A DNA stretch of 64,000 nt, from the NCBI GenBank assembly GCA_904063045.1, contig CAJFCJ010000007.1, forward strand, positions 3,417,404-3,481,403. The letters are read 5' to 3'. The position numbers and the translations under genes are program-made. Shown here piece after piece: positions 380 through 64,000 of the stretch (position 1 is the stretch's first letter; every line of letters begins with the position of its first letter). The notes under the pieces are model-generated. The model was given only the letters and a program-made list of their open reading frames with translations. It searched no databases and was not told the DNA's origin. Origin of the DNA: Dimorphilus gyrociliatus (Eukaryota > Animalia > Annelida).

Positions 380-2020
<1,641 letters not shown>

Positions 2021-10409: not shown

Positions 10410-10440
<31 letters not shown>

Positions 10441-10595: not shown

Positions 10596-11077
10596 CTTTA
10601 CTGTTCAAAGTATTTTCTACGAATAACTCTTATCTGAAGAATCTATAAAATATAGCGATAGATTATGCTATTTTACCGTCTTGCAGACTGCCTATCAAAG
10701 TTCAAGGTCACACAAGGAATAATTTCCTTAAGTTGCTTATACACATAACCAGTCTACATGAAAAAATAGTGAACAACTAGTTTTGTAATATTAATCAAAA
10801 TCTGTATTACTTATGAACCTTTAATGGAAAGTTAAATAATGGCAAAAAAAGCAATTTCCAAGAAAAACATAATTAACTATTATGGAAATAAAAAGATAAT
10901 AGTTATCAGAAATGGTGAATATTTAATAATAAACGGTTCGGAACTAAATTATCAAGTAATTTATGATATCTCCTGACAAAATAATGATTTTCAACAAAAT
11001 TTATTAACAACATACTGATAAAATCAATATATCTATGTACATAATCTGAATAAAGTTTTACAGTAACTTCTTTTCAA

Positions 11078-22836: not shown

Positions 22837-23165
22837 AACACAATTAATTCAAGATCCCAAGCCTGTTCTGAAATTGGCAAAATGCCATTATTATAGCCCA
22901 AAAATAGCTATAGCTATAACTACAATTATACTTATATATATATATATATATATAAGAATTAAAAGAGTAGAAAAACTATAAAAATAAGGTGGAAGAGGCT
23001 AAGAATAACAGGAGTGTAGGAGGAGTAGGAAAAAGAACACGAAATGACTTCCAATACACTCATACTAAGTTGATAAAGGTAAGTATCGGATTAATTAATT
23101 AAATTCGCCGTAGGTAAACCATAAAGGAAAATGAATAGAAGAGGAAAAGATAAAGATATAGTTAG

Positions 23166-30435: not shown

Positions 30436-31037
30436 CTTTTGAGCGATAATATAACGCTTTAGGAATATAAACAACAATTAATTGACAAACATCTACTTTC
30501 TAGAGTTATTCCTGCCGCATTCACGTCCGGCTTATATTTAAAGAGGGGTATCTATTCTAAAAAGAACAAGATTATAGATTTGATTGTTCGATTTGCCGTA
30601 GATTACTGTTGCAACGTTAGCTGTCTCCCTCTAGTGTGTATAATTATAAAATGATCCTTACTACAGAAAGGTGATTGCTCTATCGGTGAGACGTAATCTA
30701 AAAATAATAGATATAACTGAACGCTAAGTGGGTGTTGAATGCGTCTATACAAAAGTATTGTTTTACTTCTTCGATATTAAATATCAATTATTATTTGATA
30801 TATTCCGTAAACACGTGTTCCTTACGCAATAAGTCATAGCTATTTTTTTTAAGGAAACGTGATTCACACGTTCTTAGGACGCCATATCGTTAGAGGACAC
30901 ACATGAAAATATGTATTCTATATTCGTCAGAAACGCAACGATTTGTATCATATAAATTATCTATTTTTCATATTATTAACATCGAGATAACAGAATTAAT
31001 GACGATGTCGATAGTATGATTCCCTAAGCAATTCTCT

Positions 31038-36900: not shown

Positions 36901-39638
36901 ATGTTAGACACGTTTCAAGTATCTTGACAAGATTAACAACAGACATTGGTTTGGAAGTTCTTTGGGACGGTGGATCAAGAATTGAAGTTATTGTTGACAG
37001 TAAATACAGAAACAAACTTATGGGTCTCTGTGGTAACTTTAACGGAAAGATCACAGACGATTCAATGACAGCTTCAGGCGATGATGTTAAGAATGTTACC
37101 CAATTTGCTAATGATTGGAAAACTAGCGCAGAATGTAAGACTTCCTTTTCCGGTATCTATGAGAGCGCCTGTACACAAAGCATCCAATACGCCGCCTTTG
37201 CCAAAAAGACATGCTCTGCATTGACTGAAGGAAAATTCAAGGCTTGTAATGATGTTGTCGATCCAAAAACCTATATTCAACAATGCGAACACGATATTTG
37301 CACTTGCGGAAGCCGAGAAAAGACTACACACGACTGCGAATGTACAGCAATGGCTAGTTATTCAAGAGCTTGTGCCCTTAAAAGAGTTATTCTTGATTGG
37401 AGAAGCGATAATCTATGTAGTAAGTATTTCCTTTTACCTTCGTTGAGCCTACTTTAAAAACCCGCTCTTTAATCTTTTCGTAGAAATATCCTGTACAAAG
37501 GGACGAGTCTATAAAGAATGTGGAAAGAATTGCGGTACAACTTGTAGAAGTGTACAGCCAGAGAATTGTAAGGAAGAATGTATCGAAGGTTGCCAATGTC
37601 CTGATGGACAAAAATGGGATGATGAATCTCAATCATGCGTTATTGAAAGCGAATGCAAGTGCTACTTTAAAGGAGAGACATACAGTCCAGGCACTAAGAG
37701 AGTGGACAAATGTAATACTTGTAAATGTATTAATGGCGATTGGACCTGTACTAAAGAGGATTGTACAAGTAAGTTAATCCTCTATTTGTTGGTGTTTACG
37801 TTATTAAATGTTTTTAAAATCCATTTTATAGCTACTCAAGTTTGTCCAGCCGGTAAAGTATGGAATAGCTGTTCCGATTGTGAAAAGACATGTGATAATA
37901 TGCACATTTCTTGCCCAACTGCTTCTTGCCGAAAGGAAGGATGTACATGCCCAAAGGGAAAAGTCCTTTCTGCTGATGGAAAATGCATCACTCCTGACCA
38001 ATGTCCTTGTCACTTTCAAGGAAAGAGTTACAAAGATGGTTCAGTTATCAAGAGAGACTGCAATCATTGTTACTGTTCTAACAGCAGCTGGGTTTGTACA
38101 ACAAAGAACTGCCCAGGATTGTGTCAAGCTTACGGAGATCCTCATTACATCACTTTTGATGGTAAAGCTTACGAATTTCAAGGAGCATGCAGCTACGTTC
38201 TAGCTGAAGATTTCTGCGGTGGAGCCGGAACCTTCAGAGTTACAGTGGAGAATGTTCCTTGCGGAGCAGAAGGACTTTCGTGCACAAAGAGCGCCAAAGT
38301 TATACTCTACGATACAGTTATTCATTTTGTTAGAGGTACCGCCCCAATCATATCAAAGAATCCACTTGCCGGACCAAATACACCAAAAGCTAAATACGAA
38401 TTCAAGGAAGCTGGCGTTTTCATTATTATGACTACACCACATGGCTTGACTATTCAATGGGACAAGGGTATGAGAATCTACGTCACACTAGCCCCATCAT
38501 ATATGGGCAAGGTTTGCGGTATGTGCGGTAACTTCGACGGCAAAGCTGACAACGACTTCCGTGCTAGAAGTGGCCAATTGGAAGATAAAGCCCTTATTTT
38601 CGCCAACAGCTGGAGAGTTAAGGAATCTTGTCCAAGTGTTAAGAAAGACGCAACCAATCCATGCGATAAGAGTCCAGAAAGAGAAATGTGGGCCAAGCAC
38701 GCTTGTAACATTTTAAGAACTCCAGCTTTCAGTAAATGTCATGATGCTGTTGAAGTTGAAAGATACTACAAAGATTGCGTTTGGGATTCGTGCGGTTGTG
38801 CCAGAGGAGGAGATTGCGAATGTCTCTGTACAGCTGTAGCTGCTTACGTTAAGGCTTGTAATGAAAAAGGCATCCCAATCAAATGGAGAAGTGAGAACCA
38901 TTGTCGTAAGTATTCGTTTTCAAACAAGATAAACTGAGAAGAACATTATCTATCTATTCAATTGTAGCAATGGAATGCGACGGTGGAAAAACTTACAAGG
39001 CTTGCGGAACATCATGCCCTAAACATTGCTACGATTCTGCATTGAAAAGAAAGGAAGGATGTACAACAACATGCGTTGAAGGGTGTCACTGTCCAGAAGG
39101 AACCGTTCTTCACAAAGGACAATGCGTTAAGCACCAATCGTGTACTTGTACTGATCCTTTAACAAAGAGAGAATACGCTCCACTTACGAAAGTAGCTAGA
39201 GGATGTGACCTTTGGTAATATATATATATATATATGAATGACATTCAATAATTTCGTATCTTTTCTCCGTTTAGCGAATGTGTTGGTGGTGAATTTAAAT
39301 GTAAGCGCAATCCATTCTGTGGTGTTGAACAAACAACAACAACAACACCAGGACCAACCACTCGTAAGTTTCATCAATGATTTCTTTACTATAATGAATG
39401 AATGAATGACTAAACCTTTTCATATTTCTTTCAGAATTCTGCGGTGGAGAAGATAAAATGTCTTGTAACAGTCCAACAGGAACTTGCGCTACAACTTGTA
39501 ACGGTATTAGAGAATGTATGCACCCTAATGACGAAGACAATTGTCGTAAGTAAAAACAATAAAGAGTTTAAAGATATTGATAAATGTTTAAACTTTGTCA
39601 AACTGTTTCCATTAGCAACGACAACTGAGAGTACAACT

Positions 39639-39675
<37 letters not shown>

Positions 39676-42600
39676 CCACTACACCAGAACCAACAACAAC
39701 AACAACAACACCAACCACAACAACTGTCCCAACAACAACTGCTTTGGTTTGTGATGCTATGACTCAAGTAAAGTCAGCCTGCAAAGTGAAATGTCCAAAA
39801 ACTTGCGATTATGAATCAAAAACTACTCCTTGTAAAGACTCAAGTGAAGTTCATACTTGCAAGGAAGGTTGCGAATGTAAATTAGACCATGCTTGGCAAG
39901 GAGATAGATGTATCAAGGAAGACCAATGTAGCTGCTACGATAAGACTGAAAAAGTTCGTAGATCTGCCTATGAAACATGGAGATCTGGTTGCGAAAAATG
40001 CGAATGTAAAAACAACAAGGTAGTCTGTAAAAAAGACTGTTCTGATGAACCTTGTGGAGAGGGTTTGAGCAGAGTTAGCGTTGCTGGAGAATGTTGTCCA
40101 GTATGTATGAAAACTACCACCGAATCTGGACCTACAACAACAACAGTAGCAACTACTACACCAGCTCCAACAACAACTCCCGAACCAACCACAACTGTTA
40201 CAACTACCACTGTTACTCCTGCCTGTCCAATTAAGGAAGGTATGGATAATCCACTCCTTATTCCAAACGAAAGAATCAGATCTAGCCCAAAAATGAGCGA
40301 CAACAATGATATAAGACCAAGCTCTGTATCAGGCTGGAAGATACCATTGAAGGAAGCTATCGACGAAAAGCCATGGGTTGAAATTGATCTAGTTGAAAAA
40401 TCTGAAACATTGAACCCAGTTCCAGTGGATCGTGTTCAAATTACTGGAATAGCCAAATATACTGTTTTGTATAAAGTAGATAGTAGAGCTGATAAATGGA
40501 CTCCATACACTGAGAATGGAGTTTCTAAACAATTTGATCCAACCGATGATGAAGTTGACAGATTCCGTCCAACATTTGCAGCTGAATCAATTAAAATAGT
40601 ATTCAACGTTCCATTGAGAGGAGGCGATGTTGTTATCAAGGCAGAGGTTTTCGCTTGTTTCCATGAACCAGCCTCCACAACCACTCCCCTTACCACCACT
40701 ACCACCACTGATACCACAACCACCCCTATCCAAACTACCACCTCACCCGTTGAAACCACCTCTAAAGGTCCCATGTGTCCACTTATTGAAGGTATGGGAT
40801 CTGATCAACCAGTGTTTATCCCCGATAGTAGAATTAGCTCTGTTCCCTCTGATGACGGAACCCCAGCTTTGGCTAAGCCAACCAATGAAGGTTCTTGGAA
40901 GCCTTCTGCCAAGGGTTTAACAAAGCCAATTCTCATAATTAATTTGGTAAGACCAGACGAAAAGGTTGAACCAATATTCGTTGATGCTGTTGATATTATT
41001 GGCAACGTAAAGACTTTCACAGTCTCTTACAAAGCTGATGAAAATTCACCAACTTGGACTGACGTAACAGAAGATGGAAAGCTTAAAGAATTTGATGGAA
41101 CAAATGGAAAAGTTCAATTCCAACCAACAATTCAAGCTGAAGTTATTGCTGTAAAACTCCTCCAAACAACTGATGATGATGAAAAATTTACAGTAAAAGC
41201 AAAGGTTTTCGCCTGTTTCCATGCAGAAGTAACAACCACAACAGCAACTCCAACAACAATTACAACCACAACTGAATCTACTACCACCACAGCAACGGAA
41301 ATTGTAACAACAACAACAGTTGTTACCACAACCGTTCCAACAACAACAGAAGCATTCTGTCAAAAACAAGACATCTTGGTCAGACCAGAAGACTTTAAAT
41401 TGCAAGCATACGGAAGTGATGATCCAACAAGCAACTTGTACACAGTCAACAATGTCTGGAAATCAAAGACAGCTGATGAGGTTAAAATGGTAAGTGCTAG
41501 TTTGTCATTCGACATGACTGACGAACCAACAATCACTGACCTCACTGTTGATATTCGTGGCGCCGATGCAATTGATGTACAATTTGGAGAAGGAGATTCA
41601 GCCATTACAAAGAATGTTGCAATTTCTTCAAAGAATATCTGGACATCTCAATCAGTAAATCTTCCTAAAGGAATGATAACAAGAAGTGTAAACGTTGTTT
41701 TCCATATGCCATCCAATGCACTCTCCGAAAGCTTCATCGAAGTAAAGAATCTTAGAGTAAAGGCTTGCTACAAACCAACAATTGGAACAACAACAACCGT
41801 TTCAACATCTCCCGTACCTACAACAACAGCTACTACTACTCCCGAACCAACAACCACAGCTACTACTACTCCCGAACCAACAACAACAGCCAGTACAACC
41901 ACTGCTACAACTACAACATTGCCACCATTGGGCGATGGTTGCGAACATTTAGACTCTTCAGTATCTGAAGATAAATTGGTTGCAAGTTCAAATGTACCCT
42001 TATCGGATGCACGTATGGCTCTTGAAAAATCAAATGAAGAATACTCAGTTTCATCAGAAGATGACGTTCTATTGAGCTTCAAGATCAAGTCTAGCGATAT
42101 TGTTAAGATTACATCGGTTTCATTCGAAGTTAAAGGAGCCAGTAATGTTGTACTTGGTTTTGATGGATCAAACGGTGAAATAAGCGCACCAGCCAAGAAT
42201 ATTCCAAGAACTGATGTATTTAATACAATCACTAGTACCTCAAAAATTGTTGCCAATATCCTCAAGATCAAACTTTCACCTGGCACATCTGTTCAAGTGA
42301 AAAACTTGTATATTAGAGCCTGTTATGAAACACCAACTCAAACAACAACCGTTGAAATTAAAGATCAAACACCAACTTTCCCAGTCTTTACCGATTCAAC
42401 AACTCAACCTGAACCAACATGCGGCGTCACAGGACAAATGTATGGTTTGTGTACATGCACTTTGACCTGCGCAGATATCATTTCTGGACGTGGATGCAGC
42501 ACTTGGAAATCTACAGCTGATAGCCAAGGAAAATGTTGTAAATGTCCAATCGGACAAGTTGTTAAGGATGGAGTTTGCGTAAATGAAAAGGAATGTACTT

Positions 42601-45600: not shown

Positions 45601-48600
45601 AATCAATATTGTTTTTTCTAAAAGCTATTGAAACTACTGTTCCACCACCAACAACAACTGCTGAACCAACAACTACAACAACAAGTAATAATTGCGCAAT
45701 AATATAATATATCATTGTTTTTTATTATTATCTTTTATCTTTACAGAGTGTATAAACAATGCCAAATGTGAATGTCAAGAAAGTTGTACAGACTCTGAAG
45801 CTTGTAAAGATACGCCAGCTTGTTGCCCAGATTTTAATTGTGCAGAAGGATACAAGAAGAACGAAGATGGAGCTTGCATTAAGGAAGCTGATTGTATTGC
45901 TATCAAAGAAACATTTATCCGTAAATTAAATTTTAATATAACAACGCCATAATAATATTCAACTTTTCAATATTAAACAGCCATCTGCAGTTACCCAACA
46001 TTGGCTACTCCAGGAGCTGTTGAATCAATCACAGCCACATCTGTCTGGTCAGAGAATGGTAAAGCCCATGATGCAAGCAATGTCATCCCAGGATTACCTG
46101 GTTGGGTAGCAGATTCAGATAAAGATGATGCTATGGAACTTGTCGTTAAATTCACTCTGCCAACTTTTGTAGCTGGTTTAAGTGTCAGAATGGCTGGAAT
46201 AAAAACATTCCAAATTTTCTATTCCAACGACGGTACTGATTGGGTTCCCTATAAAGAAGTAGGAAACACACCAAAGGTATTTTTTCAACTTTATTGAATT
46301 TTAGTATATTAATATCAACATTTTAAAGGTTTTTGAAAAAGTATACTTTCCAAGTGGACAATATGTACACATTTACTTCCAACAAGCCTTCTTTGCTAAA
46401 CTTGTTAAATTTGACATCATTGAAGAAGAAGTACAAAAAGTTGGAGCAAAAACTTTCCCAAAACTCAACATGGATGTTTTGTCCTGCCATATTCCAATGT
46501 TTGCTGATGCGGAATGTATTGAAAAGGATGGAATGGACTCACCTTTATATTTACCAAATAAATATATTAAATTATCTCCAACACCAGACGGTTTTACCTC
46601 TGATATTGTAAGACCTTCAGGTTCAGGATGGAATATTCCAGCAGTCTTTGCAAGTAAACCCACAATAACTGTACAACTTTCACCTGACTATAACAGGAAA
46701 TCAATTATTGTTGATAAACTTGTCATCACTGGAAATGGAGAAGTAGACACATTGGCCTATAAACCAAATGTTGAATCAGACTTTTTATTGATAGGAAAGA
46801 AAAATGTCGGGGTAAAAACCAAAATTTTACATTAAAATCATTTAAACATAATAACCTTAACCTTTGCATATAGACAATTGGTTCATCCCAAGAAGGAAAA
46901 GTTATTTATAATCTCTCAAGAAAGATTAAAGCTACTGACCTTCGAATAACCTTCAAAATTCCATCAATCAAGAAAACTGATGTATCCATAAAATTCTCAG
47001 TATTCGCTTGTTTTGATTCCGTACAAACAACAACAACTACTACTACACCAATGCCAACAACAACTACAACACAGGAAACAACTACACCAATGCCAACAAC
47101 AACACAAGAAACAACTCAAGCTCCAGTTACAACAACAACGCAACCTGACACAACAACTGCTGTAGTAATAACATCAACCAATCCAACAACAGGACAAACA
47201 ACTGTTCAAATATGTAAATTTGAAGAAGGCATGAATGAACCACAATATATCCCTGATACATCAATCTTTACAAGTACACTAAGTGAAGACTCTAAAGACA
47301 ATCCAAAAACCAATTTAAGGCCAGATTCCATAAAACCATACTTAATGGAAAAATCTCAATCTAACAGTGCAGATATAGATGATAACCCATTTGTTGCAAT
47401 TGATCTAACACCTATTGATTCTGAAAACGCACCTTTTGTTGAGAAAGTAAAATTCCCACAATCCAATATTGGTACTGTAACAATCCAGCGTAAAATACCA
47501 GATGGTGAAAAAAATTCTGGACAATATCAAACAATTGCTGAAAAGGCTACTCCAGACACATCTGATGCAACAATTAAGTTTCCAGAACCAATGAAAATGA
47601 GTGAAATAAAAATAATTTTCTTGACAACAAATGATGCAGAAAACACATTCAAAATTAAAATTGCAATTCATGCATGCTTCACAGTTAAGATCACAACCAC
47701 AACTCAAGGACCAACAACAACAACAACCCAACAACAAACAACCCAAATGACAACAACAGTCCCTGAAACAACAACAATCACAGTACCATCTACAACAACA
47801 ACTGAAGTACCTACCACACCTAAAGAAACCACAACTGAAGCTGCACCAACTACAACAACAACTACAACAGCAGCACCAACAACAACAACCACTCTTGTAT
47901 CTACAACAACAATGTCAGTTAAACCAACTGAAGGTACAACAACAACACCTGCCGTTATTGAAACAACCACAACTACTGCAGGAACAACAACCAAAATCTG
48001 TCCATTCCAAGAGACAATGGACAATCCTGCTGTAATTGGTCAAGGCCAAATCAAGACTAGCCCATCTGAAGAAGGTTCAAATGATAAGGTTCGTTTGGAC
48101 AAGGAAGGATGGACACCAAAGGTTCCAACCAGCTCAACTGAAGAAAAACCATATGTTGATATTGACCTCGATGTTGGTGATGACAGTAATGAACCATATG
48201 TTGAAAAGGTCATTATTAAGGGCAATACTCAGATAGTATCAGTATACAAAAAGAATGTCAATGATGATGATTGGACTGGAATTGTTGAAGATGTTGAAGT
48301 TAAGGAAAATGGAGAAGTTGTCTTCCCCACAGTTGTAAAGGCCGATTCTATAAGAATTGTACTTGTTAAACCTGAAGATAATGAGGATGGTTCTCCAGTA
48401 ACTAACTACAGAGTTAATGTTGGAGTACATGCTTGTATCACACCAACTAGTAAGTAGTCAATTGTGCTCAAAATTTTCTTTTCATTTGTTAAAGAACAAA
48501 CATTTAATTTTTAAATTTTTTTCAGTGACTACAACAACATCAGCTCCAACAACAACTATGACTACAACTACACCTGTAGCTACAACAACAACAGAAGCTA

Positions 48601-51600
48601 CTACAACAGCAGCTCCTACAACAACAACTACTACAACAGCTGCTCCAACAACTACAGCTGGTACAACAACAGAAGCTACAACAACAACAACAATGAAACC
48701 AACTGAAAGTACAACTTTGAGTACAACAACTACTACTAGCACAACAACAACAACAACTGCTATGGTAACAACTACCACAACTCCAGCAGAAACAACAACA
48801 GTCAAGATCTGTAACTTTGAAGAAGGTATGGATGAACCACAATTTATCCCAGCTGGACAACTTGAATCAAGCCCAGATACCACTGACAAAGAAAACAACC
48901 CATTGACAAACTTGAGACCAAAGAGTGGAAAGGCTTTCGTATTGCCTGTTCCAAAGAAGGACTCTGATGAAAAGAAACCATTTGTCACAGTTGACTTGAC
49001 ACCAACTGATGATACTGCTGCTCCATTTGTTGAGAAGGTACGCTTCCCAGAATCAAACATTGGAAAGGTTACAATCAAGAGATTGGTACCAGCCAGTGAA
49101 AAGAATGCTGGACAATATGAAACTGTTGCTGATAATGAAACACCAACTGGTGATGATAATACAATCAAATTCACAACACCAGTCCGCATGGATAAGATCC
49201 AAATCATTTTGGAAGAACCACAAAATGATGATGATACTGAATACAAACTTCATGTTGCTATACATGCCTGCTTCAAGGTTAAAGTAACAACAACAACTCA
49301 ACCACCAACAACAACAACTACAACAGCTGCACCAACAACAACTACTGAAGCTACAACAACAACAGCTGCACCAACTACAACAACAACTACAACAGCAGCA
49401 CCAACAACAACTATGACCACAACAGCTGCACCAACAACAACTACTGAAGCTACAACTACAATTACTGTTCCATCAACAACTACAGTTACTACAACAACAA
49501 CTACAACACCAGCACCAACCACAACTGAAGCTACAACAACAGCACCAACTACAACATCAACAACAGCAGCTCCAACCACAACAAAAACTACTACTACTAC
49601 CACAGCAGCACCAACAACAACTACTGTTCAATCTACAACAACAATGTCAGTTAAACCAACTGAGGGTACAACAACAACACCTGCCATTGTTACAACAACA
49701 ACAACTGCTGAAACAACAACAACTAAGGTCTGTCCATTCAAAGAGACAATGAAAGATTCAACAATCATTCCAAAGAAACTTATTAAGACAACTCCTGAAG
49801 ATGGAGAAGATTCAAATGATAAGGTTCGTTTGGGTAAGGAAGGCTGGATTACAAATGTTCCAACATCCAGTGATCAACCTAAACCAACTGTTGAAATTAA
49901 ATTGAATCGCCAAGATGATCCTGAAGATCCCTATGTTGAAAAGGTTATTGTTAAGGGAAATGCTGGCAAGGTATCTATATACAAGAAAACAAGAACAGAT
50001 GATGATTACACACCAATCCAAACTAATGTTGATGTACCAAAAGAAGGTGGAGACATTGTCTTCCCCAAGGTTCAAAAGATCAACACTATCAAGATTGTAT
50101 TGGAAGAACCTACATTGAATGAAGATGGAACCCCAGCAAAGAAATACAAGGTCAACATTGGAATCAGTGCTTGTATCTCATACACTGGTAAGTATTAATA
50201 TTAATTGTTTTCCAACATTTTCTAATCTAATCAACTTATTTACACTTATAGTTACAACAACAACAACCACACCAACTCCAACAACAACAACAGAAGCAAC
50301 TACAACTATGGCACCAACAACAACAGAAACAACAACAACAACAGCTGCTACAACCACAACTGCTAGAACAACAACTACAACTTCTGCAACAACTACAACA
50401 ACTGCTATGGTAACAACTACCACAACTCCAGCAGAAACAACAACAGTCAAGATCTGTAACTTTGAAGAAGGTATGGATGAACCACAATTTATCCCAGCTG
50501 GACAACTTGAATCAAGCCCAGAAACCACTGACAAAGAAAACAACCCATTGACAAACTTGAGACCAAAGAGCGGAAAGGCTTTCGTATTGCCTGTTCCAAA
50601 GAAGGACTCAGATGAAAAGAAACCATTTGTCACAGTTGACTTGACACCAACTGATGATACTGCTGCTCCATTTGTTGAGAAGGTACGCTTCCCAGAATCA
50701 AACATTGGAAAGGTTACAATCAAGAGATTGGTACCAGCCAGTGAAAAGAATGCTGGACAATACGAAACTGTTGTTACAAGCCAAAAACTTGATGATGATA
50801 ATACAATCAAATTCACAACACCAGTCCGCATGGATAAGATCCAAATCATTTTGGAAGAACCACAAAATGATGATGATACTGAATACAAACTTCATGTTGC
50901 TATACATGCTTGCTTCAAGGTTAAAATAACAACAACAACTCAACCACCAACAACAACAACTACAACAGCTGCACCAACTACAACTACTGAAGCTACAACA
51001 ACAACAGCAGCACCAACAACAACCACTACTCTTCCATCAACTACAACAGTTGTTGTTACAACTCCATCTACAACTATGCAATCAACAACAACAGCTACAA
51101 CAGCAGCACCAACAACAACAACTGAAGCTACAACAACAACAGCTGCACCAACTACAACAACAACTACAACAGCAGCACCAACAACAACAACCACTCTTGT
51201 ATCTACAACAACAATGTCAGTTAAACCAACTGAAGGTACAACAACAACACCTGCCGTTATTGAAACAACCACAACTACTGCAGGAACAACAACCAAAATC
51301 TGTCCATTCCAAGAGACAATGGACAATCCTGCTGTAATTGGTCAAGGCCAAATCAAGACTAGCCCATCTGAAGAAGGTTCAAATGATAAGGTTCGTTTGG
51401 ACAAGGAAGGATGGACACCAAAGGTTCCAACCAGCTCAACTGAAGAAAAACCATATGTTGATATTGACCTCGATGTTGGTGATGACAGTAATGAACCATA
51501 TGTTGAAAAGGTCATTATTAAGGGCAATACTCAGATAGTATCAGTATACAAAAAGAATGTCAATGATGATGATTGGACTGGAATTGTTGAAGATGTTGAA

Positions 51601-54600
51601 GTTAAGGAAAATGGAGAAGTTGTCTTCCCCACAGTTGTAAAGGCCGATTCTATAAGAATTGTACTTGTTAAACCTGAAGATAATGAGGATGGTTCTCCAG
51701 TAACTAACTACAGAGTTAATGTTGGAGTACATGCTTGTATCACACCAACTAGTAAGTAGTCAATTGTGCTCAAAATTTTCTTTTCATTTGTTAAAGAACA
51801 AACATTTAATTTTTAAATTTTTTTCAGTGACTACAACAACATCAGCTCCAACAACAACTATGACTACAACTACACCTGTAGCTACAACAACAACAGAAGC
51901 TACTACAACAGCAGCTCCTACAACAACAACTACTACAACAGCTGCTCCAACAACTACAGCTGGTACAACAACAGAAGCTACAACAACAACAACAATGAAA
52001 CCAACTGAAAGTACAACTTTGAGTACAACAACTACTACTAGCACAACAACAACAACAACTGCTATGGTAACAACTACCACAACTCCAGCAGAAACAACAA
52101 CAGTCAAGATCTGTAACTTTGAAGAAGGTATGGATGAACCACAATTTATCCCAGCTGGACAACTTGAATCAAGCCCAGATACCACTGACAAAGAAAACAA
52201 CCCATTGACAAACTTGAGACCAAAGAGTGGAAAGGCTTTCGTATTGCCTGTTCCAAAGAAGGACTCTGATGAAAAGAAACCATTTGTCACAGTTGACTTG
52301 ACACCAACTGATGATACTGCTGCTCCATTTGTTGAGAAGGTACGCTTCCCAGAATCAAACATTGGAAAGGTTACAATCAAGAGATTGGTACCAGCCAGTG
52401 AAAAGAATGCTGGACAATATGAAACTGTTGCTGATAATGAAACACCAACTGGTGATGATAATACAATCAAATTCACAACACCAGTCCGCATGGATAAGAT
52501 CCAAATCATTTTGGAAGAACCACAAAATGATGATGATACTGAATACAAACTTCATGTTGCTATACATGCCTGCTTCAAGGTTAAAGTAACAACAACAACT
52601 CAACCACCAACAACAACAACTACAACAGCTGCACCAACAACAACTACTGAAGCTACAACAACAACAGCTGCACCAACTACAACAACAACTACAACAGCAG
52701 CACCAACAACAACTATGACCACAACAGCTGCACCAACAACAACTACTGAAGCTACAACTACAATTACTGTTCCATCAACAACTACAGTTACTACAACAAC
52801 AACTACAACACCAGCACCAACCACAACTGAAGCTACAACAACAGCACCAACTACAACATCAACAACAGCAGCTCCAACCACAACAAAAACTACTACTACT
52901 ACCACAGCAGCACCAACAACAACTACTGTTCAATCTACAACAACAATGTCAGTTAAACCAACTGAGGTACAACAACAACACCTGCCATTGTTACAACAAC
53001 AACAACTGCTGAAACAACAACAACTAAGGTCTGTCCATTCAAAGAGACAATGAAAGATTCAACAATCATTCCAAAGAAACTTATTAAGACAACTCCTGAA
53101 GATGGAGAAGATTCAAATGATAAGGTTCGTTTGGGTAAGGAAGGCTGGATTACAAATGTTCCAACATCCAGTGATCAACCTAAACCCAACTGTTGAAATT
53201 AAATTGAATCGCCAGATGATCCTGAAGATCCCTATGTTGAAAAGGTTATTGTTAAGGGAAATGCTGGCAAGGTATCTATATACAAGAAAACAAGAACAGA
53301 TGATGATTACACACCAATCCAAACTAATGTTGATGTACCAAAAGAAGGTGGAGACATTGTCTTCCCCAAGGTTCAAAAGATCAACACTATCAAGATTGTA
53401 TTGGAAGAACCTACATTGAATGAAGATGGAACCCCAGCAAAGAAATACAAGGTCAACATTGGAATCAGTGCTTGTATCTCATACACTGGTAAGTATTAAT
53501 ATTAATTGTTTTCCAACATTTTCTAATCTAATCAACTTATTTACACTTATAGTTACAACAACAACAACCACACCAACTCCAACAACAACAACAGAAGCAA
53601 CTACAACTATGGCACCAACAACAACAGAAACAACAACAACAACAGCTGCTACAACCACAACTGCTAGAACAACAACTACAACTTCTGCAACAACTACAAC
53701 AACTGCTATGGTAACAACTACCACAACTCCAGCAGAAACAACAACAGTCAAGATCTGTAACTTTGAAGAAGGTATGGATGAACCACAATTTATCCCAGCT
53801 GGACAACTTGAATCAAGCCCAGAAACCACTGACAAAGAAAACAACCCATTGACAAACTTGAGACCAAAGAGCGGAAAGGCTTTCGTATTGCCTGTTCCAA
53901 AGAAGGACTCAGATGAAAAGAAACCATTTGTCACAGTTGACTTGACACCAACTGATGATACTGCTGCTCCATTGTTGAGAAGGTACGCTTCCCAGAATCA
54001 AACATTGGAAAGGTTACAATCAAGAGATTGGTACCAGCCAGTGAAAAGAATGCTGGACAATACGAAACTGTTGTTACAAGCCAAAACTTGATGATGATAA
54101 TACAATCAAATTCACAACACCAGTCCGCATGGATAAGATCCAAATCATTTTGGAAGAACCACAAAATGATGATGATACTGAATACAAACTTCATGTTGCT
54201 ATACATGCTTGCTTCAAGGTTAAAATAACAACAACAACTCAACCACCAACAACAACAACTACAACAGCTGCACCAACTACAACTACTGAAGCTACAACAA
54301 CAACAGCAGCACCAACAACAACCACTACTCTTCCATCAACTACAAAGTTGTTGTTACAACTCCATCTACAACTATGCAATCAACAACAACAGCTACAACA
54401 GCAGCACCAACAACAACAACTGAAGCTACAACAACAACAGCTGCACCAACTACAACAACAACTACAACAGCAGCACCAACAACAACAACCACTCTTGTAT
54501 CTACAACAACAATGTCAGTTAAACCAACTGAAGGTACAACAACAACACCTGCCGTTATTGAAACAACCACAACTACTGCAGGAACAACAACCAAAATCTG

Positions 54601-57600
54601 TCCATTCCAAGAGACAATGGACAATCCTGCTGTAATTGGTCAAGGCCAAATCAAGACTAGCCCATCTGAAGAAGGTTCAAATGATAAGGTTCGTTTGGAC
54701 AAGGAAGGATGGACACCAAAGGTTCCAACCAGCTCAACTGAAGAAAAACCATATGTTGATATTGACCTCGATGTTGGTGATGACAGTAATGAACCATATG
54801 TTGAAAAGGTCATTATTAAGGGCAATACTCAGATAGTATCAGTATACAAAAAGAATGTCAATGATGATGATTGGACTGGAATTGTTGAAGATGTTGAAGT
54901 TAAGGAAAATGGAGAAGTTGTCTTCCCCACAGTTGTAAAGGCCGATTCTATAAGAATTGTACTTGTTAAACCTGAAGATAATGAGGATGGTTCTCCAGTA
55001 ACTAACTACAGAGTTAATGTTGGAGTACATGCTTGTATCACACCAACTAGTAAGTAGTCAATTGTGCTCAAAATTTTCTTTTCATTTGTTAAAGAACAAA
55101 CATTTAATTTTTAAATTTTTTTCAGTGACTACAACAACATCAGCTCCAACAACAACTATGACTACAACTACACCTGTAGCTACAACAACAACAGAAGCTA
55201 CTACAACAGCAGCTCCTACAACAACAACTACTACAACAGCTGCTCCAACAACTACAGCTGGTACAACAACAGAAGCTACAACAACAACAACAATGAAACC
55301 AACTGAAAGTACAACTTTGAGTACAACAACTACTACTAGCACAACAACAACAACAACTGCTATGGTAACAACTACCACAACTCCAGCAGAAACAACAACA
55401 GTCAAGATCTGTAACTTTGAAGAAGGTATGGATGAACACAATTTATCCCAGCTGGACAACTTGAATCAAGCCCAGATACCACTGACAAAGAAAACAACCC
55501 ATTGACAAACTTGAGACCAAAGAGTGGAAAGGCTTTCGTATTGCCTGTTCCAAAGAAGGACTCTGATGAAAAGAAACCATTTGTCACAGTTGACTTGACA
55601 CCAACTGATGATACTGCTGCTCCATTTGTTGAGAAGGTACGCTTCCCAGAATCAAACATTGGAAAGGTTACAATCAAGAGATTGGTACCAGCCAGTGAAA
55701 AGAATGCTGGACAATATGAAACTGTTGCTGATAATGAAACACCAACTGGTGATGATAATACAATCAAATTCACAACACCAGTCCGCATGGATAAGATCCA
55801 AATCATTTTGGAAGAACCACAAAATGATGATGATACTGAATACAAACTTCATGTTGCTATACATGCCTGCTTCAAGGTTAAAGTAACAACAACAACTCAA
55901 CCACCAACAACAACAACTACAACAGCTGCACCAACAACAACTACTGAAGCTACAACAACAACAGCTGCACCAACTACAACAACAACTACAACAGCAGCAC
56001 CAACAACAACTATGACCACAACAGCTGCACCAACAACAACTACTGAAGCTACAACTACAATTACTGTTCCATCAACAACTACAGTTACTACAACAACAAC
56101 TACAACACCAGCACCAACCACAACTGAAGCTACAACAACAGCACCAACTACAACATCAACAACAGCAGCTCCAACCACAACAAAAACTACTACTACTACC
56201 ACAGCAGCACCAACAACAACTACTGTTCAATCTACAACAACAATGTCAGTTAAACCAACTGAGGGTACAACAACAACACCTGCCATTGTTACAACAACAA
56301 CAACTGCTGAAACAACAACAACTAAGGTCTGTCCATTCAAAGAGACAATGAAAGATTCAACAATCATTCCAAAGAAACTTATTAAGACAACTCCTGAAGA
56401 TGGAGAAGATTCAAATGATAAGGTTCGTTTGGGTAAGGAAGGCTGGATTACAAATGTTCCAACATCCAGTGATCAACCTAAACAACTGTTGAAATTAAAT
56501 TGAATCGCCAAGATGATCCTGAAGATCCCTATGTTGAAAAGTTATTGTTAAGGAAATGCTGGCAAGGTATCTATATACAAGAAAACAAGAACAGATGATG
56601 ATTACACACCAATCCAAACTAATGTTGATGTACCAAAAGAAGTGAGACATTGTCTTCCCCAAGGTTCAAAAGATCAACACTATCAAGATTGTATTGGAAG
56701 AACCTACATTGAATGAAGATGGAACCCCAGCAAAAAATACAAGGTCAACATTGGAATCAGTGCTTGTATCTCATACACTGGTAAGTATTAATATTAATTG
56801 TTTTCCAACATTTTCTAATCTAATCAACTTATTTACACTTATAGTTACAACAACAACAACCACACCAACTCCAACAACAACAACAGAAGCAACTACAACT
56901 ATGCACCAACAACAACAGAAACAACAACAACAACAGCTGCTACAACCACAACTGCTAGAACAACAACTACAACTTCTGCAACAACTACAACAACTGCTAT
57001 GTAACAACTACCACAACTCCAGCAGAAACAACAACAGTCAAGATCTGTAACTTTGAAGAAGTATGGATGAACCACAATTTATCCCAGCTGGACAACTTGA
57101 ATCAAGCCCAGAAACCACTGACAAAGAAAACAACCCATTGACAAACTTGAGACCAAAGAGCGAAAGGCTTTCGTATTGCCTGTTCCAAAGAAGGACTCAG
57201 ATGAAAAGAAACCATTTGTCACAGTTGACTTGACACCAACTGATGATACTGCTGCTCCATTTGTTGAGAAGGTACGCTTCCCAGAATCAAACATTGGAAA
57301 GGTTACAATCAAGAGATTGGTACCAGCCAGTGAAAAGAATGCTGGACAATACGAAACTGTTGTACAAGCCAAAAACTTGATGATGATAATACAATCAAAT
57401 TCACAACACCAGTCCGCATGGATAAGATCCAAATCATTTTGAGAACCACAAAATGATGATGATACTGAATACAAACTTCATGTTGCTATACATGCTTGCT
57501 TCAAGGTTAAAATAACAACAACAACTCAACCACCAACAACAACAACTACAACAGCTGCACCAACTACAACTACTGAAGCTACACACACAACAGCAGCACC

Positions 57601-60600
57601 AACAACAACCACTACTCTTCCATCAACTACAACAGTTGTTGTTACACTCCATCTACAACTATGCAATCAACAAACAACAGCTACAACAGCAGCACCAACA
57701 ACAACAACTGAAGCTACAACAACAACAGCTGCACCAACTACAACAACAACTANNNNNNNNNNNNNNNNNNNNNNNNNNNNNNNNNNNNNNNNNNNNNNNN
57801 NNNNNNNNNNNNNNNNNNNNNNNNNNNNNNNNNNNNNNNNNNNNNNNNNNNNNNNNNNNNNNNNNNNNNNNNNNNNNNNNNNNNNNNNNNNNNNNNNNNN
57901 NNNNNNNNNNNNNNNNNNNNNNNNNNNNNNNNNNNNNNNNNNNNNNNNNNNNNNNNNNNNNNNNNNNNNNNNNNNNNNNNNNNNNNNNNNNNNNNNNNNN
58001 NNNNNNNNNNNNNNNNNNNNNNNNNNNNNNNNNNNNNNNNNNNNNNNNNNNNNNNNNNNNNNNNNNNNNNNNNNNNNNNNNNNNNNNNNNNNNNNNNNNN
58101 NNNNNNNNNNNNNNNNNNNNNNNNNNNNNNNNNNNNNNNNNNNNNNNNNNNNNNNNNNNNNNNNNNNNNNNNNNNNNNNNNNNNNNNNNNNNNNNNNNNN
58201 NNNNNNNNNNNNNNNNNNNNNNNNNNNNNNNNNNNNNNNNNNNNNNNNNNNNNNNNNNNNNNNNNNNNNNNNNNNNNNNNNNNNNNNNNNNNNNNNNNNN
58301 NNNNNNNNNNNNNNNNNNNNNNNNNNNNNNNNNNNNNNNNNNNNNNNNNNNNNNNNNNNNNNNNNNNNNNNNNNNNNNNTAAAGAACAAACATTTAATTT
58401 TTAAATTTTTTCAGTGACTACAACAACATCAGCTCCAACAACAACTATGACTACAACTACACCTGTAGCTACAACAACAACAAAGCTACTACAACAGCAG
58501 CTCCTACAACAACAACTACTACAACAGCTGCTCCAACAACTACAGCTTACAACAACAGAAGCTACAACAACAACAACAATGAAACCAACTGAAAGTACAA
58601 CTTGAGTACAACAACTACTACTAGCACAACAACAACAACAACTGCTATGGTAACAACTACCACAACTCCAGCAAAACAACAACAGTCAAGATCTGTAACT
58701 TTGAAGAAGTATGGATGAACCACAATTTATCCCAGCTGACAACTTGAATCAAGCCCAGATACCACTGACAAAGAAAACAACCCATTGACAAACTTGAGAC
58801 CAAAGAGTGGAAAGCTTTCGTATTGCCTTTCCAAAGAAGACTCTGATGAAAAGAAACCATTTGTCACAGTGTCACAGTTGACTTGACACCAACTGATGAT
58901 ACTGCTGCTCATTTGTTGAGAAGGTACGCTTCCCAGAATCAAACATTGGAAAGGTTACAATCAAGAGATTGGTACCAGCCAGTGAAAAGAATGCTGGACA
59001 ATATGAAACTGTTGCTGATAATGAAACACCACCAACTGGTGATGATAATACAATCAAATTCACAAACACCAGTCCGCATGGATAAGATCCAAATCATTTG
59101 GAAAACCACAAAATGATGATGATCTGAATACAAACTTCATGTTGCTATACATGCCTGCCTTCAAGGTTAAAGTAACAACAACAACTCAACCACCAACAAC
59201 AACAACTACAACAGCTGCACCAACAACAACTACTGAAGCTACAACAACAACAGCTGCACCAACTACAACAACAACTACAACAGCAGCACCAACAACAACT
59301 ATGACCACAACAGCTGCACCAACAACAACTACTGAAGCTACAACTACAATTACTGTCCATCAACAACTACAGTTACTACAACAACAACTACAACACCAGC
59401 ACCAACCACAACTGAAGCTACAACAACAGCACCAACTACAACATCAACAACAGCAGCTCAACCACAACAAAAACTACTACTACTACCACAGCAGCACCAA
59501 CAACAACTACTGTTCATCTACAACAACAATGTCAGTTAAACCAACTGAGGGTACAACAACAACACCTGCCATTGTTACAACAACAACAACTGCTGAAACA
59601 ACAACAACTAGGTCTGTCCATTCAAAGAGACAATGAAAGATTCAACAATCATTCCAAAGAAACTTATTAAGACAACTCCTGAAGATGGAGAAGATTCAAT
59701 GATAAGGTTCGTTTGGGTAAGGAAGGCTGGATTACAAATGTTCCAACATCCAGTGATCAACCTAAACCAACTGTTGAAATTAAATTGAATCGCCAAGATG
59801 ATCCTGAAGATCCCTATGTTGAAAAGGTTATTGTTAAGGAAATGCTGGCAAGGTATCTATATACAGAAAACAAGAACAGATGATGATTACACACCAATCC
59901 AAACTAATGTTGATGTACCAAAAGAAGGTGGAGACATTGTCTTCCCCAAGTTCAAAAGATCAACACTATCAAGATTGTATTGGAAGAACCTACATTGAAT
60001 GAAGATGAACCCCAGCAAAGAAATACAAGGTCAACATTGGAATCAGTGCTTGTATCTCATACACTGGTAAGTATTAATATTAATTGTTTTTCCAACATTT
60101 TCTAATCTAATCAACTTATTTACACTTATAGTTACAACAACAAACCACACCAACTCCAACAACAACAACAGAACAACTACAACTATGGCACCAACAACAA
60201 CAGAAACAACAACAACAACAGCTGCTACAACCACAACTGCTAGAACAACAACTACAACTTCTGCAACAACTACAACAACTGCTATGGTAACAACTACCAC
60301 AACTCCAGCAGAAACAACAACAGTCAAGATCTGTAACTTTGAAGAAGGTATGGATGAACCACAATTTATCCCAGCTGGACAACTTGAATCAAGCCCAGAA
60401 ACCACTGACAAAGAAAACAACCCATTGACAAACTTGAGACCAAAGAGCGGAAAGGCTTTCGTATTGCCTGTTCCAAAGAAGGACTCAGATGAAAAGAAAC
60501 CATTTGTCACAGTTGACTTGACACCAACTGATGATACTGCTGCTCCATTTGTTGAGAAGGTACGCTTCCCAGAATCAAACATTGGAAAGGTTACAATCAA

Positions 60601-63600
60601 GAGATTGGTACCAGCCAGTGAAAAGAATGCTGGACAATACGAAACTGTTGTTACAAGCCAAAAACTTGATGATGATAATACAATCAAATTCACAACACCA
60701 GTCCGCATGGATAAGATCCAAATCATTTTGGAAGAACCACAAAATGATGATGATACTGAATACAAACTTCATGTTGCTATACATGCTTGCTTCAAGGTTA
60801 AAATAACAACAACAACTCAACCACCAACAACAACAACTACAACAGCTGCACCAACTACAACTACTGAAGCTACAACAACAACAGCAGCACCAACAACAAC
60901 CACTACTCTTCCATCAACTACAACAGTTGTTGTTACAACTCCATCTACAACTATGCAATCAACAACAACAGCTACAACAGCAGCACCAACAACAACAACT
61001 GAAGCTACAACAACAACAGCTGCACCAACTACAACAACAACTACAACAGCAGCACCAACAACAACAACCACTCTTGTATCTACAACAACAATGTCAGTTA
61101 AACCAACTGAAGGTACAACAACAACACCTGCCGTTATTGAAACAACCACAACTACTGCAGGAACAACAACCAAAATCTGTCCATTCCAAGAGACAATGGA
61201 CAATCCTGCTGTAATTGGTCAAGGCCAAATCAAGACTAGCCCATCTGAAGAAGGTTCAAATGATAAGGTTCGTTTGGACAAGGAAGGATGGACACCAAAG
61301 GTTCCAACCAGCTCAACTGAAGAAAAACCATATGTTGATATTGACCTCGATGTTGGTGATGACAGTAATGAACCATATGTGAAAAGGTCATTATTAAGGG
61401 CAATACTCAGATAGTATCAGTATACAAAAAGAATGTCAATGATGATGATTGGACTGGAATTGTTGAAGATGTTGAAGTTAAGGAAAATGGAGAAGTTGTC
61501 TTCCCCACAGTTGTAAAGGCCGATTCTATAAGAATTGTACTTGTTAAACCTGAAGATAATGAGGATGGTTCTCCAGTAACTAACTACAGAGTTAATGTTG
61601 GAGTACATGCTTGTATCACACCAACTAGTAAGTAGTCAATTGTGCTCAAAATTTTCTTTTCATTTGTTAAAGAACAAACATTTAATTTTTAAATTTTTTT
61701 CAGTGACTACAACAACATCAGCTCCAACAACAACTATGACTACAACTACACCTGTAGCTACAACAACAACAGAAGCTACTACAACAGCAGCTCCTACAAC
61801 AACAACTACTACAACAGCTGCTCCAACAACTACAGCTGGTACAACAACAGAAGCTACAACAACAACAACAATGAAACCAACTGAAAGTACAACTTGAGTA
61901 CAACAACTACTACTAGCACAACAACAACAACAACTGCTATGGTAACAACTACCACAACTCCAGCAGAAACAACAACAGTCAAGATCTGTAACTTTGAAGA
62001 AGGTATGGATGAACCACAATTTATCCCAGCTGGACAACTTGAATCAAGCCCAGATACCACTGACAAAGAAAACAACCCATTGACAAACTTGAGACCAAAG
62101 AGTGGAAAGGCTTTCGTATTGCCTGTTCCAAAGAAGGACTCTGATGAAAAGAAACCATTTGTCACAGTTGACTTGACACCAACTGATGATACTGCTGCTC
62201 CATTTGTTGAGAAGGTACGCTTCCCAGAATCAAACATTGGAAAGGTTACAATCAAGAGATTGGTACCAGCCAGTGAAAAGAATGCTGGACAATATGAAAC
62301 TGTTGCTGATAATGAAACACCAACTGGTGATGATAATACAATCAAATTCACAACACCAGTCCGCATGGATAAGATCCAAATCATTTTGGAAGAACCACAA
62401 AATGATGATGATACTGAATACAAACTTCATGTTGCTATACATGCCTGCTTCAAGGTTAAAGTAACAACAACAACTCAACCACCAACAACAACAACTACAA
62501 CAGCTGCACCAACAACAACTACTGAAGCTACAACAACAACAGCTGCACCAACTACAACAACAACTACAACAGCAGCACCAACAACAACTATGACCACAAC
62601 AGCTGCACCAACAACAACTACTGAAGCTACAACTACAATTACTGTTCCATCAACAACTACAGTTACTACAACAACAACTACAACACCAGCACCAACCACA
62701 ACTGAAGCTACAACAACAGCACCAACTACAACATCAACAACAGCAGCTCCAACCACAACAAAAACTACTACTACTACCACAGCAGCACCAACAACAACTA
62801 CTGTTCAATCTACAACAACAATGTCAGTTAAACCAACTGAGGGTACAACAACAACACCTGCCATTGTTACAACAACAACAACTGCTGAAACAACAACAAC
62901 TAAGGTCTGTCCATTCAAAGAGACAATGAAAGATTCAACAATCATTCCAAAGAAACTTATTAAGACAACTCCTGAAGATGGAGAAGATTCAAATGATAAG
63001 GTTCGTTTGGGTAAGGAAGGCTGGATTACAAATGTTCCAACATCCAGTGATCAACCTAAACCAACTGTTGAAATTAAATTGAATCGCCAAGATGATCCTG
63101 AAGATCCCTATGTTGAAAAGGTTATTGTTAAGGGAAATGCTGGCAAGGTATCTATATACAAGAAAACAAGAACAGATGATGATTACACACCAATCCAAAC
63201 TAATGTTGATGTACCAAAAGAAGGTGGAGACATTGTCTTCCCCAAGGTTCAAAAGATCAACACTATCAAGATTGTATTGGAAGAACCTACATTGAATGAA
63301 GATGGAACCCCAGCAAAGAAATACAAGGTCAACATTGGAATCAGTGCTTGTATCTCATACACTGGTAAGTATTAATATTAATTGTTTTCCAACATTTTCT
63401 AATCTAATCAACTTATTTACACTTATAGTTACAACAACAACAACCACACCAACTCCAACAACAACAACAGAAGCAACTACAACTATGGCACCAACAACAA
63501 CAGAAACAACAACAACAACAGCTGCTACAACCACAACTGCTAGAACAACAACTACAACTTCTGCAACAACTACAACAACTGCTATGGTAACAACTACCAC

Positions 63601-64000
63601 AACTCCAGCAGAAACAACAACAGTCAAGATCTGTAACTTTGAAGAAGGTATGGATGAACCACAATTTATCCCAGCTGGACAACTTGAATCAAGCCCAGAA
63701 ACCACTGACAAAGAAAACAACCCATTGACAAACTTGAGACCAAAGAGCGGAAAGGCTTTCGTATTGCCTGTTCCAAAGAAGACTCAGATGAAAAGAAACC
63801 ATTTGTCACAGTTGACTTGACACCAACTGATGATACTGCTGCTCCATTTGTTGAGAAGGTACGCTTCCCAGAATCAAACATTGGAAAGGTTACAATCAAG
63901 AGATTGGTACCAGCCAGTGAAAAGAATGCTGGACAATACGAAACTGTTGTTACAAGCCAAAAACTTGATGATGATAATACAATCAAATTCACAACACCAG
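33936..64000 (+). CDS. Giant secreted gel-forming mucin-like protein (SCO-spondin/hemolectin/otogelin-type D1-D2-D3 head plus PTS/discoidin repeats), 3' end outside the window
   Basis: Signal peptide MMGPWPLQCLILLLVTIPAALT; EMI-like end (RCCVGWTGDDC) plus 5 EGF repeats; VWD1 (WGTKHFITFD...CGLCGNFNG), VWD2 (SGDPHYKTFDG...MGLCGNFNG), VWD3 (YGDPHYITFDG...CGMCGNFDG), each with C8 and TIL; TIL/VWC modules; LDLa motifs; Thr-rich tracts; repeated Cys-bracketed beta domains. GT-AG introns keep the frame through about 52.9 kb. Confidence 0.9.
35331..39215 (+). other. D1-D2-D'-D3 region: three VWD-C8-TIL assemblies
   Basis: Cysteine spacing and the TFDG, CGLCGN and WR..C motifs typical of vWF/mucin D assemblies. 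Confidence 0.9.
40224..42323 (+). other. Four non-identical discoidin-like domains (40224-40658, 40776-41216, 41358-41768, 41940-42323) separated by Thr-rich linkers
   Basis: Each starts with Cys and ends in AC(F/Y), about 130-150 aa. The first two show C..EGM..P..IP..RI.S...W...PW.I.L...KW...K.F...A..I.I, the F5/8C pattern. The last two are more divergent. Confidence 0.6.
42830..42946 (+). other. LDL-receptor class A module (a second LDLa-like motif lies near 44965-45050)
   Basis: CPTGAKACDNCSKCFTPDLVCDRRNDCNDMSDEKDC; the second reads LRCDGKCDC...SDESEELC. Confidence 0.75.
45986..47011 (+). other. Two further discoidin (F5/8C)-like domains, the first close to consensus
   Basis: FQIFYSNDGTDWVPYKE...PKVF at about 46210-46340 matches the F5/8C signature Y.V.YS.DG..W..Y...KVF. 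Confidence 0.75.
47840..64000 (+). repeat. 3,302-bp intragenic higher-order tandem repeat (exon A 1,662 + intron 64 + exon B 1,500 + intron 76), about 4.9 copies in the window
   Basis: Exon A starts at 48526, 51828, 55126, 58415 and 61704. Exon B starts at 50252, 53553, 56845, 60132 and 63429. Both introns are sequence-identical between intact copies. Confidence 0.95.
57753..58379. other. Assembly gap (627 N) inside the repeat array
   Basis: Run of n. It sits where the second domain of the third exon-B copy is expected. Confidence 0.99.

What the first reader, a model, noticed from the sequence alone, without database searches (positions are those of the whole stretch)
39444..64000. Giant mucin with a beads-on-a-string body of about 26 compact discoidin-like domains alternating with poly-Thr tracts
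Seen: after a vWF/mucin D1-D2-D3 head, the protein alternates Thr-rich O-glycosylation-type tracts with roughly 135-155-aa domains opened by Cys and closed by AC. About 26 copies are visible, about 9,200 aa are estimated by hand, and the gene has not ended. Established: in MUC2/MUC5AC/MUC5B the PTS is interrupted by CysD domains, and hemolectin and SCO-spondin carry only one or two F5/8C domains. Inference: these domains are shortened F5/8C (discoidin) folds, since the 45986-46487 copy keeps YSNDGTDW and the others align to it by eye. They may occupy the CysD position as a multivalent lectin or cross-linking array, i.e. a distinct gel, adhesive or cocoon mucin design. I cannot check whether it has already been described.
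Basis: partly seen in the sequence, partly recalled or inferred. Interest (0 to 1): 0.85.

Follow-up and report, generated by a model that had tools for sequence, protein, structure and literature searches.

The report
Giant worm mucin with discoidin beads
A tiny marine worm has an intact-looking gene for a roughly 14,000-residue mucus-type protein in which about 42 small discoidin-fold beads are strung on threonine-rich stretches; ribbon worms, flatworms, molluscs and a sea squirt have similar designs, so it is an under-described variant of known invertebrate mucins and not a one-off.

Summary
Real, with corrections. The gene starts at 33936, not 39444, and 25 GT-AG exons give 4,291 stop-free codons: signal peptide, EMI-like, EGF, three VWD-C8-TIL units, Cys-rich modules, eight beads. 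The 26 visible beads are only 11 distinct sequences. From 48450 a 3,302-bp unit (4 beads, 2 phase-1 introns, 1,054 aa) repeats near-identically; frameshifts look like long-read errors (102 indel bases, 9 substitutions). The 627-N gap matches the 625 bp missing from one period; continuity is unproven. The public assembly shows 8 units, about 42 beads, about 14,100 aa. AlphaFold models of two beads are discoidin (F5/8C) folds (Z 13.8-15.5), not CysD. A related genome carries the same unit as a circular contig, and half-units are homogenised within each species. Beads lack spike 3 and the CBM32 His, so 'lectin' is unsupported. VWD2 and VWD3 group with Macrostomum, Octopus and ascidian Clavelina proteins, apart from hemolectin and SCO-spondin. 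F5/8 domains in lophotrochozoan mucins are published (PMC4948705); I found no description of these arrays. This scan noted a similar gene elsewhere in this genome (s1-080540).

The parts
33936..34015 (+). Exon 1: start codon and hydrophobic signal-peptide-like segment
   Evidence: judged by eye, no signal-peptide predictor run
34162..35280 (+). Exons 2-6: EMI-like segment and EGF repeats
   Evidence: EGF Pfam hits; EMI-like from cysteine pattern only; exon chain
35331..36600 (+). D1 assembly (VWD1-C8-TIL) and following Cys-rich module
36606..37419 (+). VWD2-C8-2, with a GDPH motif
38116..39214 (+). VWD3-C8-3-TIL3; GDPH motif; keeps the DCECLC cysteine motif of C8-3, lacks the TIL3 insert with the second interchain Cys of MUC2
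40224..42329 (+). Beads D1 (40224-40664), D2 (40776-41222), D3 (41358-41774), D4 (41940-42329) with Thr linkers
   Evidence: Pfam F5_F8_type_C E 8.5e-7 on this ORF; dN/dS 0.14 or less against L001
42417..45920 (+). Cys-rich middle: TIL, VWC and LDLa-like modules, partly shared in order with Octopus, Macrostomum and Clavelina proteins
   Evidence: LDLa-like by cysteine pattern and BLAST, not detected by Pfam here
45986..47014 (+). Beads D5 (45986-46490) and D6 (46515-47014), each split by a phase-0 intron; D5 is the most canonical
   Evidence: Pfam F5_F8_type_C E 1.9e-7 for D5; introns
47213..48442 (+). Beads D7 (47213-47683) and first A (47999-48442)
   Evidence: model of A pLDDT 88, discoidin fold
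48450..51751 (+). First, error-free tandem unit: intron 76 bp, exon 1662 bp (Thr, bead B 48810-49277, Thr, bead C 49731-50180), intron 64 bp, exon 1500 bp (Thr, bead B' 50455-50919, Thr, bead A 51301-51744); both introns phase 1; 1,054 aa
   Evidence: model of B pLDDT 95.7, discoidin fold Z 15.5
51752..64000 (+). Units 2-5 of the array, near-identical to unit 1 apart from single-base indels; continues past the window (8 units to about 74800, then B and a divergent A at 76023-76463, then TIL/VWC modules)
57753..58379 (.). Assembly gap of 627 N; 625 bp are missing if exactly one period is continuous, hiding one A bead

Best explanation
A functional, secreted gel-forming mucin of a spiralian 'discoidin-bead' type. 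Shown: one stop-free exon chain from a signal-peptide-like start through three VWD-C8-TIL units into the bead array; beads of discoidin fold with one Cys at each end; a 3.3-kb two-exon unit that repeats and is homogenised within species. Inferred: the head packs and polymerises the protein in gland granules as in MUC2 and vWF, with at most one D3 interchain disulfide; the Thr tracts are O-glycosylated, stiff and hydrated; the acidic, aromatic-poor beads, which have lost a ligand loop, act as disulfide-closed nodes that break up the brush and give weak multivalent self-contacts, the role CysD plays in vertebrate mucins; unequal crossing-over of symmetric phase-1 exon pairs changes length without breaking frame. 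Likely product: ciliary-gliding or feeding mucus from epidermal or pharyngeal glands.
For: Exon chain; head domains; folds; intact colinear orthologue at 72-75% nucleotide identity with dN/dS 0.14 or less for D1-D4, and 0.22-0.44 for array beads in a second genome; circular one-unit contig in that genome; B/B' 92-99% identical within species but about 61% between; loss of spike 3 in all spiralian beads aligned; the same layout in other spiralians and Clavelina; CysD needed for MUC2 filaments (PMC7599080).
Against: No expression, localisation, glycosylation or binding data. The C-terminal cystine knot was not reached. Array beads evolve fairly fast (dN/dS up to 0.44-0.5), which fits a spacer as well as a binding surface. 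Self-association is by analogy only.
Confidence: 0.6

Rival explanations
1. The beads are a multivalent lectin or ligand array that traps microbes, food particles or matrix glycans.
For: The fold is shared with CBM32 and discoidin I; four bead types are kept in fixed order between species; D5 is near-canonical.
Against: Spike 3 is cut by 4-6 residues, the His after the conserved Trp of CBM32 is absent from all 11 types, B, D4 and D7 have no Trp, and aromatic counts are 7-13 against 12-21. Spikes carry ligand binding in discoidin domains (PMC6497308).
Confidence: 0.2
2. It is a cocoon, fibre or adhesive protein rather than a gel: GDPH self-cleavage in VWD2 and VWD3 gives disulfide-linked fragments that aggregate, as reported for sea star Sfp1.
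For: GDPH in VWD2 and VWD3; second D3 interchain Cys missing, as in SCO-spondin and hemolectin; the animal lays cocoons (PMC5101659); a VWD x3 + LDLa protein is in limpet pedal adhesive mucus (PMC7333891).
Against: Large Thr-rich fraction typical of hydrated mucins; orthologous heads occur in Octopus, a flatworm and an ascidian, which argues against a cocoon-specific role.
Confidence: 0.15
3. The long array is mostly an assembly artefact (one or two units copied many times), or the frameshifts are real and the array is dead.
For: Copies are nearly identical, introns included; a gap lies inside the array; 7 of 8 units carry frameshifts as assembled.
Against: 102 indel bases against 9 substitutions, 67 of 81 deletions in homopolymer runs (background 50%), 74 distinct positions, densest next to the gap. 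An independent assembly of a related genome holds the same unit in frame as a circular contig with a 55-bp terminal overlap, so it is tandem there too. The copy number 8 itself remains unverified.
Confidence: 0.05

Closest known systems
Lophotrochozoan F5_F8-containing mucin-like proteins (Lang et al. 2016, PMC4948705)
   Same: Three VWD-C8-TIL units, PTS and F5_F8 domains; the paper calls F5_F8 characteristic of the group.
   Different: The paper's text describes CysD inserted near the F5_F8 domains and no long arrays; here there is no CysD, and about 42 divergent beads, of a type Pfam detects in only 4 of 76 sequences. Its supplementary figure S4 could not be read.
Clavelina lepadiformis LOC143445613 product (P0199, 6,276 aa, uncharacterised)
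   Same: VWD2 and VWD3 group with the window's (99/95, 99/96); shared order of TIL, VWC and LDLa-like modules; 8 F5/8C domains between Thr tracts.
   Different: Its F5/8C domains are canonical with spike 3; it ends in a cystine-knot-like domain, which I could not check here.
Hemolectin/hemocytin
   Same: EGF, three VWD-C8-TIL units, then F5/8C domains; no second D3 interchain Cys.
   Different: Separate clade in both VWD trees; nesting with mollusc hemolectins rejected (p-AU 6e-9); hemolectin has 2-5 canonical F5/8C and two further VWD units, not seen in the parts reached here.
SCO-spondin
   Same: EMI-like start, three VWD units, LDLa-like and F5/8C modules.
   Different: No TSP1 repeats found; large PTS content; separate clade.
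Vertebrate MUC2/MUC5AC/MUC5B
   Same: D1-D2-D3 head, C8-3 cysteine motif, PTS broken by small globular domains.
   Different: Globular domains are 2-Cys discoidin folds, not CysD; second interchain Cys absent; GDPH in D2 and D3. A sister relation is only weakly supported (86/58, 88/77) and the alternatives are not rejected (p-AU about 0.10).
Unnamed spiralian bead proteins: Macrostomum PAA50248, Octopus XP_052827192, Capitella ELU10543, Liolophura XP_064614628, Lineus XP_064639835, Potamilus KAK3603587
   Same: Same divergent two-Cys beads between Thr tracts (3-13 per model); near-identical tandem copies in Lineus and Liolophura too.
   Different: Fewer beads in the available, mostly partial models; Lineus and Potamilus heads fall outside the window's clade on long branches; the Capitella and Liolophura fragments have no head.

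Membership tests
Gel-forming mucin (VWD-C8-TIL x3 + PTS + CK) | Three N-terminal VWD-C8-TIL units after a signal peptide | tested here: met
   signal peptide by eye
Gel-forming mucin (VWD-C8-TIL x3 + PTS + CK) | Extensive PTS regions | tested here: met
   linkers 64-73% P+T+S, no Cys
Gel-forming mucin (VWD-C8-TIL x3 + PTS + CK) | D3 interchain cysteines (MUC2 Cys1088 and Cys1130) | tested here: inconclusive
   C8-3 DCECLC motif kept; TIL3 insert with the second Cys absent; matching of residue numbers to motifs rests on my own knowledge
Gel-forming mucin (VWD-C8-TIL x3 + PTS + CK) | C-terminal cystine knot (and VWD4) | not testable with these tools
   Only the first 920 bp of the next 878-aa gene model were fetched; its precomputed Pfam list shows TIL only; TIL/VWC then more Thr-rich sequence in a relative
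Gel-forming mucin (VWD-C8-TIL x3 + PTS + CK) | Secretion, O-glycosylation and gel formation | not testable with these tools
F5/8 type C (discoidin) domain | Beta-sandwich fold with terminal Cys pair | tested here: met
   pLDDT 88 and 95.7; best matches neuropilin, DDR, CASPR2, factor V/VIII C2, Z 13.8 and 15.5, rmsd 2.7; both Cys invariant in 76 sequences
F5/8 type C (discoidin) domain | Pfam PF00754 above the gathering score | tested here: inconclusive
   D5 and the D1-D4 ORF pass; array beads do not; 4 of 76 family members hit
CBM32 / galactose-binding discoidin lectin | Ligand loops and the Trp-His sugar-binding motif | tested here: not met
   His absent in all 11 types, spike 3 shortened; role of the His is from my own knowledge
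CysD (Mucin2_WxxW) | About 100 aa, many Cys, WxxW motif | tested here: not met
   two Cys per bead, no WxxW, no Pfam hit
Hemolectin/hemocytin | VWD domains group with hemolectins; 3+2 VWD layout | tested here: not met
   no VWD in the downstream models' Pfam lists
SCO-spondin | TSP1 repeats and grouping with SCO-spondins | tested here: not met
   no TSP1 in Pfam scans; separate clade

The most novel reading that the evidence does not exclude
An unrecognised, bilaterian-old mucin orthogroup (annelid, flatworm, cephalopod, ascidian), distinct from hemolectin and SCO-spondin and possibly sister to vertebrate MUC2/MUC5, in which a Pfam-invisible discoidin subfamily without its third ligand loop does the cross-linking job of CysD, and whose length is tuned by concerted evolution of symmetric exon pairs.
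Probability: 0.3. Interest if true: 0.7.

Novelty: new variant of a known kind. Interest (0 to 1): 0.5.

Why it matters
Invertebrate mucus, trail and adhesive proteomes are full of unannotated 'mucin-2-like' or 'SCO-spondin-like' fragments. A bead profile would let them be assigned, and single 150-aa beads can be expressed and tested for self-association or binding. It also offers a second, independent solution to how a mucin brush is punctuated by small domains, and a clear case of concerted evolution in a coding array that includes introns.

Tried and rejected
The spliced model was built only inside a script to count codons and stops; it was not sent to any search tool, and all searches were done piece by piece by reference. 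Single-bead sequence search of the PDB found nothing real; profiles gave only weak F5/8C hits, so structure prediction was needed. Bacterial RTX-type hits in the profile search (P0038, P0093) vanished with a better profile and were dropped. The first VWD2 tree mixed D2 and D3 domains and was redone. The first AU tests left Clavelina out of the group and were redone; with it, the placement next to hemolectin or SCO-spondin is not rejected. No vWF, otogelin or cnidarian rows were in the trees; Lineus was left out of the final tree and Potamilus out of the AU tests as long branches. Attempts to reach the 3' end gave only TIL/VWC and Thr-rich sequence. Paper searches for the homologues' accessions and for this architecture found nothing beyond Lang 2016; Lang 2007 was not held. 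I recall ascidian endostyle 'vWF-like' genes that might match the Clavelina protein, but found no text to test this.

Full report
Source. The gene model P0003 encoded in this window lies on assembly GCA_904063045.1, record CAJFCJ010000007.1. From my own knowledge, and in line with earlier notes on this genome, this is the annelid Dimorphilus gyrociliatus. Short introns of 50-146 bp fit a compact genome.

Observation. The gene begins at 33936 with a hydrophobic leader; 25 exons joined at GT-AG introns give 4,291 codons without a stop up to 48449 (a local count only). Pfam finds EGF, VWD, C8, TIL and VWC in the head. Twenty-five complete two-Cys domains and one cut domain lie between 40224 and 64000, with Cys-free linkers of 49-66% Thr. 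In-window length is about 9,250 aa.

The array. From 48450 the DNA repeats with a period of 3,302 bp. One unit has two exons (1,662 and 1,500 bp, both multiples of three), two phase-1 introns, four beads (B, C, B', A) and 1,054 aa. So the 26 visible beads are 11 distinct sequences. The public contig holds 8 units, then a B and a divergent A bead, then TIL/VWC modules: about 42 beads and about 14,100 aa, split by the annotation into at least seven models. Against the clean first unit, the others show 81 deleted bases, 21 inserted bases and 9 substitutions in about 23.5 kb; 67 of the 81 deletions are in homopolymer runs against a 50% background, at 74 different positions. This is the pattern of unpolished long-read consensus, not of a decaying gene (inference).

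The gap. The left flank ends at unit position 2727 and the right resumes at 51, so one period lacks 625 bp; the gap is 627 N. This agrees with continuity but does not prove it: extra whole units would look the same, and the flanks are the most error-rich parts.

Independent support. L001 (Logan SRR23372229) is a colinear, intact orthologue of 35300-46805 at 72-75% nucleotide identity, with dN/dS of 0.14 or less for D1-D4 (synonymous sites near saturation). L005 (ENA ERZ23486848), 77% identical, holds exactly one unit with the same bead order and intron positions, in frame, with a 55-bp exact terminal overlap. That is how a short-read assembler collapses a near-perfect tandem repeat (inference). 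B and B' are 92-99% identical within each genome but about 61% between them, while A and C pair with their counterparts across species (for the tree the two ends of the circular contig were joined locally). The unit therefore predates the split and is kept uniform by concerted evolution.

Fold of the beads. AlphaFold models of A (pLDDT 88) and B (95.7) match neuropilin b domains, DDR1/2, CASPR2, factor V/VIII C2 and discoidin I best (Foldseek E about 1e-5; Z 13.8 and 15.5, rmsd 2.7). They have two Cys and no WxxW, so they are not CysD. Aligned with canonical F5/8C domains from Clavelina and hemolectins, all spiralian beads lack the TQG-loop (spike 3) by 4-6 residues, carry 7-13 aromatic residues against 12-21, and are mostly acidic. 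The His of the CBM32 Trp-His motif is absent. Spikes mediate discoidin ligand binding (PMC6497308). A lectin role is thus not supported, though not excluded.

Relatives. A profile search found 162 proteins. Beads between Thr tracts occur in Capitella (11), Lineus (13), Liolophura (7), Macrostomum (5-6), Potamilus (12 Cys pairs), Octopus (3 or more) and an unnamed Logan genome; Lineus and Liolophura also have near-identical tandem copies. Pfam recognises only 4 of 76 beads. In a tree rooted between D2 and D3, both domains put the window with Macrostomum, Octopus and the ascidian Clavelina (99/95 and 99/96), apart from hemolectins and SCO-spondins. Nesting with mollusc hemolectins is rejected; the deeper position of the clade is unresolved. 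The Clavelina protein has the same module order, 8 canonical F5/8C between Thr tracts and a cystine-knot-like end. Lineus and Potamilus heads lie elsewhere on long branches, so more than one spiralian mucin lineage may carry beads.

Mechanism. Shown: architecture, fold, selection, concerted evolution. Inferred from MUC2 (PMC7599080): head-driven packing and polymerisation; here the C8-3 motif is kept but the TIL3 cysteine insert is missing, so head-to-head linkage rests on one disulfide at most. GDPH sites in VWD2 and VWD3 may self-cleave (own knowledge of FCGBP and Sfp1). I think it most likely (0.6) that the protein is a secreted mucus scaffold whose beads are structural, weakly self-associating nodes. 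Rivals: lectin array (0.2), cocoon or adhesive fibre (0.15), artefact or dead array (0.05). The animal has ciliary-band and pharyngeal glands and lays cocoons (PMC5101659).

Novelty. Lang et al. 2016 state that F5_F8 is characteristic of lophotrochozoan mucin-like proteins, so the kind is known. I found no paper on the divergent bead family, the long arrays or this orthogroup, within a library that lacks most subscription journals. This scan noted a comparable gene with more than 60 beads on another piece of this genome (s1-080540, not checked by me). Verdict: new variant of a known kind, interest 0.5.

Noticed in passing
window 21429-22848 (-): Nuclear receptor with C4 zinc finger and ligand-binding domain, ecdysone-receptor/LXR-like by eye.
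   Followed up: partly
window 27130-30477 (-): Exon pieces that look like a RecQ/WRN-type helicase, by eye only.
   Followed up: no
window 681-14044: Ordinary-looking genes by eye: CK2 alpha (681-1415, -), CCDC113-like (2515-3397, +), UBX protein (7101-7472, -), short-chain dehydrogenase (9802-10176, -), RBBP6-like (11404-14044, -).
   Followed up: no
window 16921-20208 (+) and 24372-25967 (+): SLC22-like transporter exons; a single-exon 531-aa coiled-coil ORF with no significant Pfam hit.
   Followed up: partly
L003/L004 (window 49151-77462): The public annotation splits this one gene into at least seven models (6030, 667, 177, 98, 1760, 596, 2706, 878 aa), several with out-of-frame poly-Gln stretches caused by the indels.
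   Followed up: partly
P0009, P0011 (JGI contigs): Bead-family domains joined by short linkers that are not Thr-rich, so the bead also occurs outside a PTS context.
   Followed up: no
L007 1737-7950: Orthologue-like gene in another animal with a near-canonical bead, TIL modules and further beads each split by an intron at the same place as window D5/D6.
   Followed up: partly
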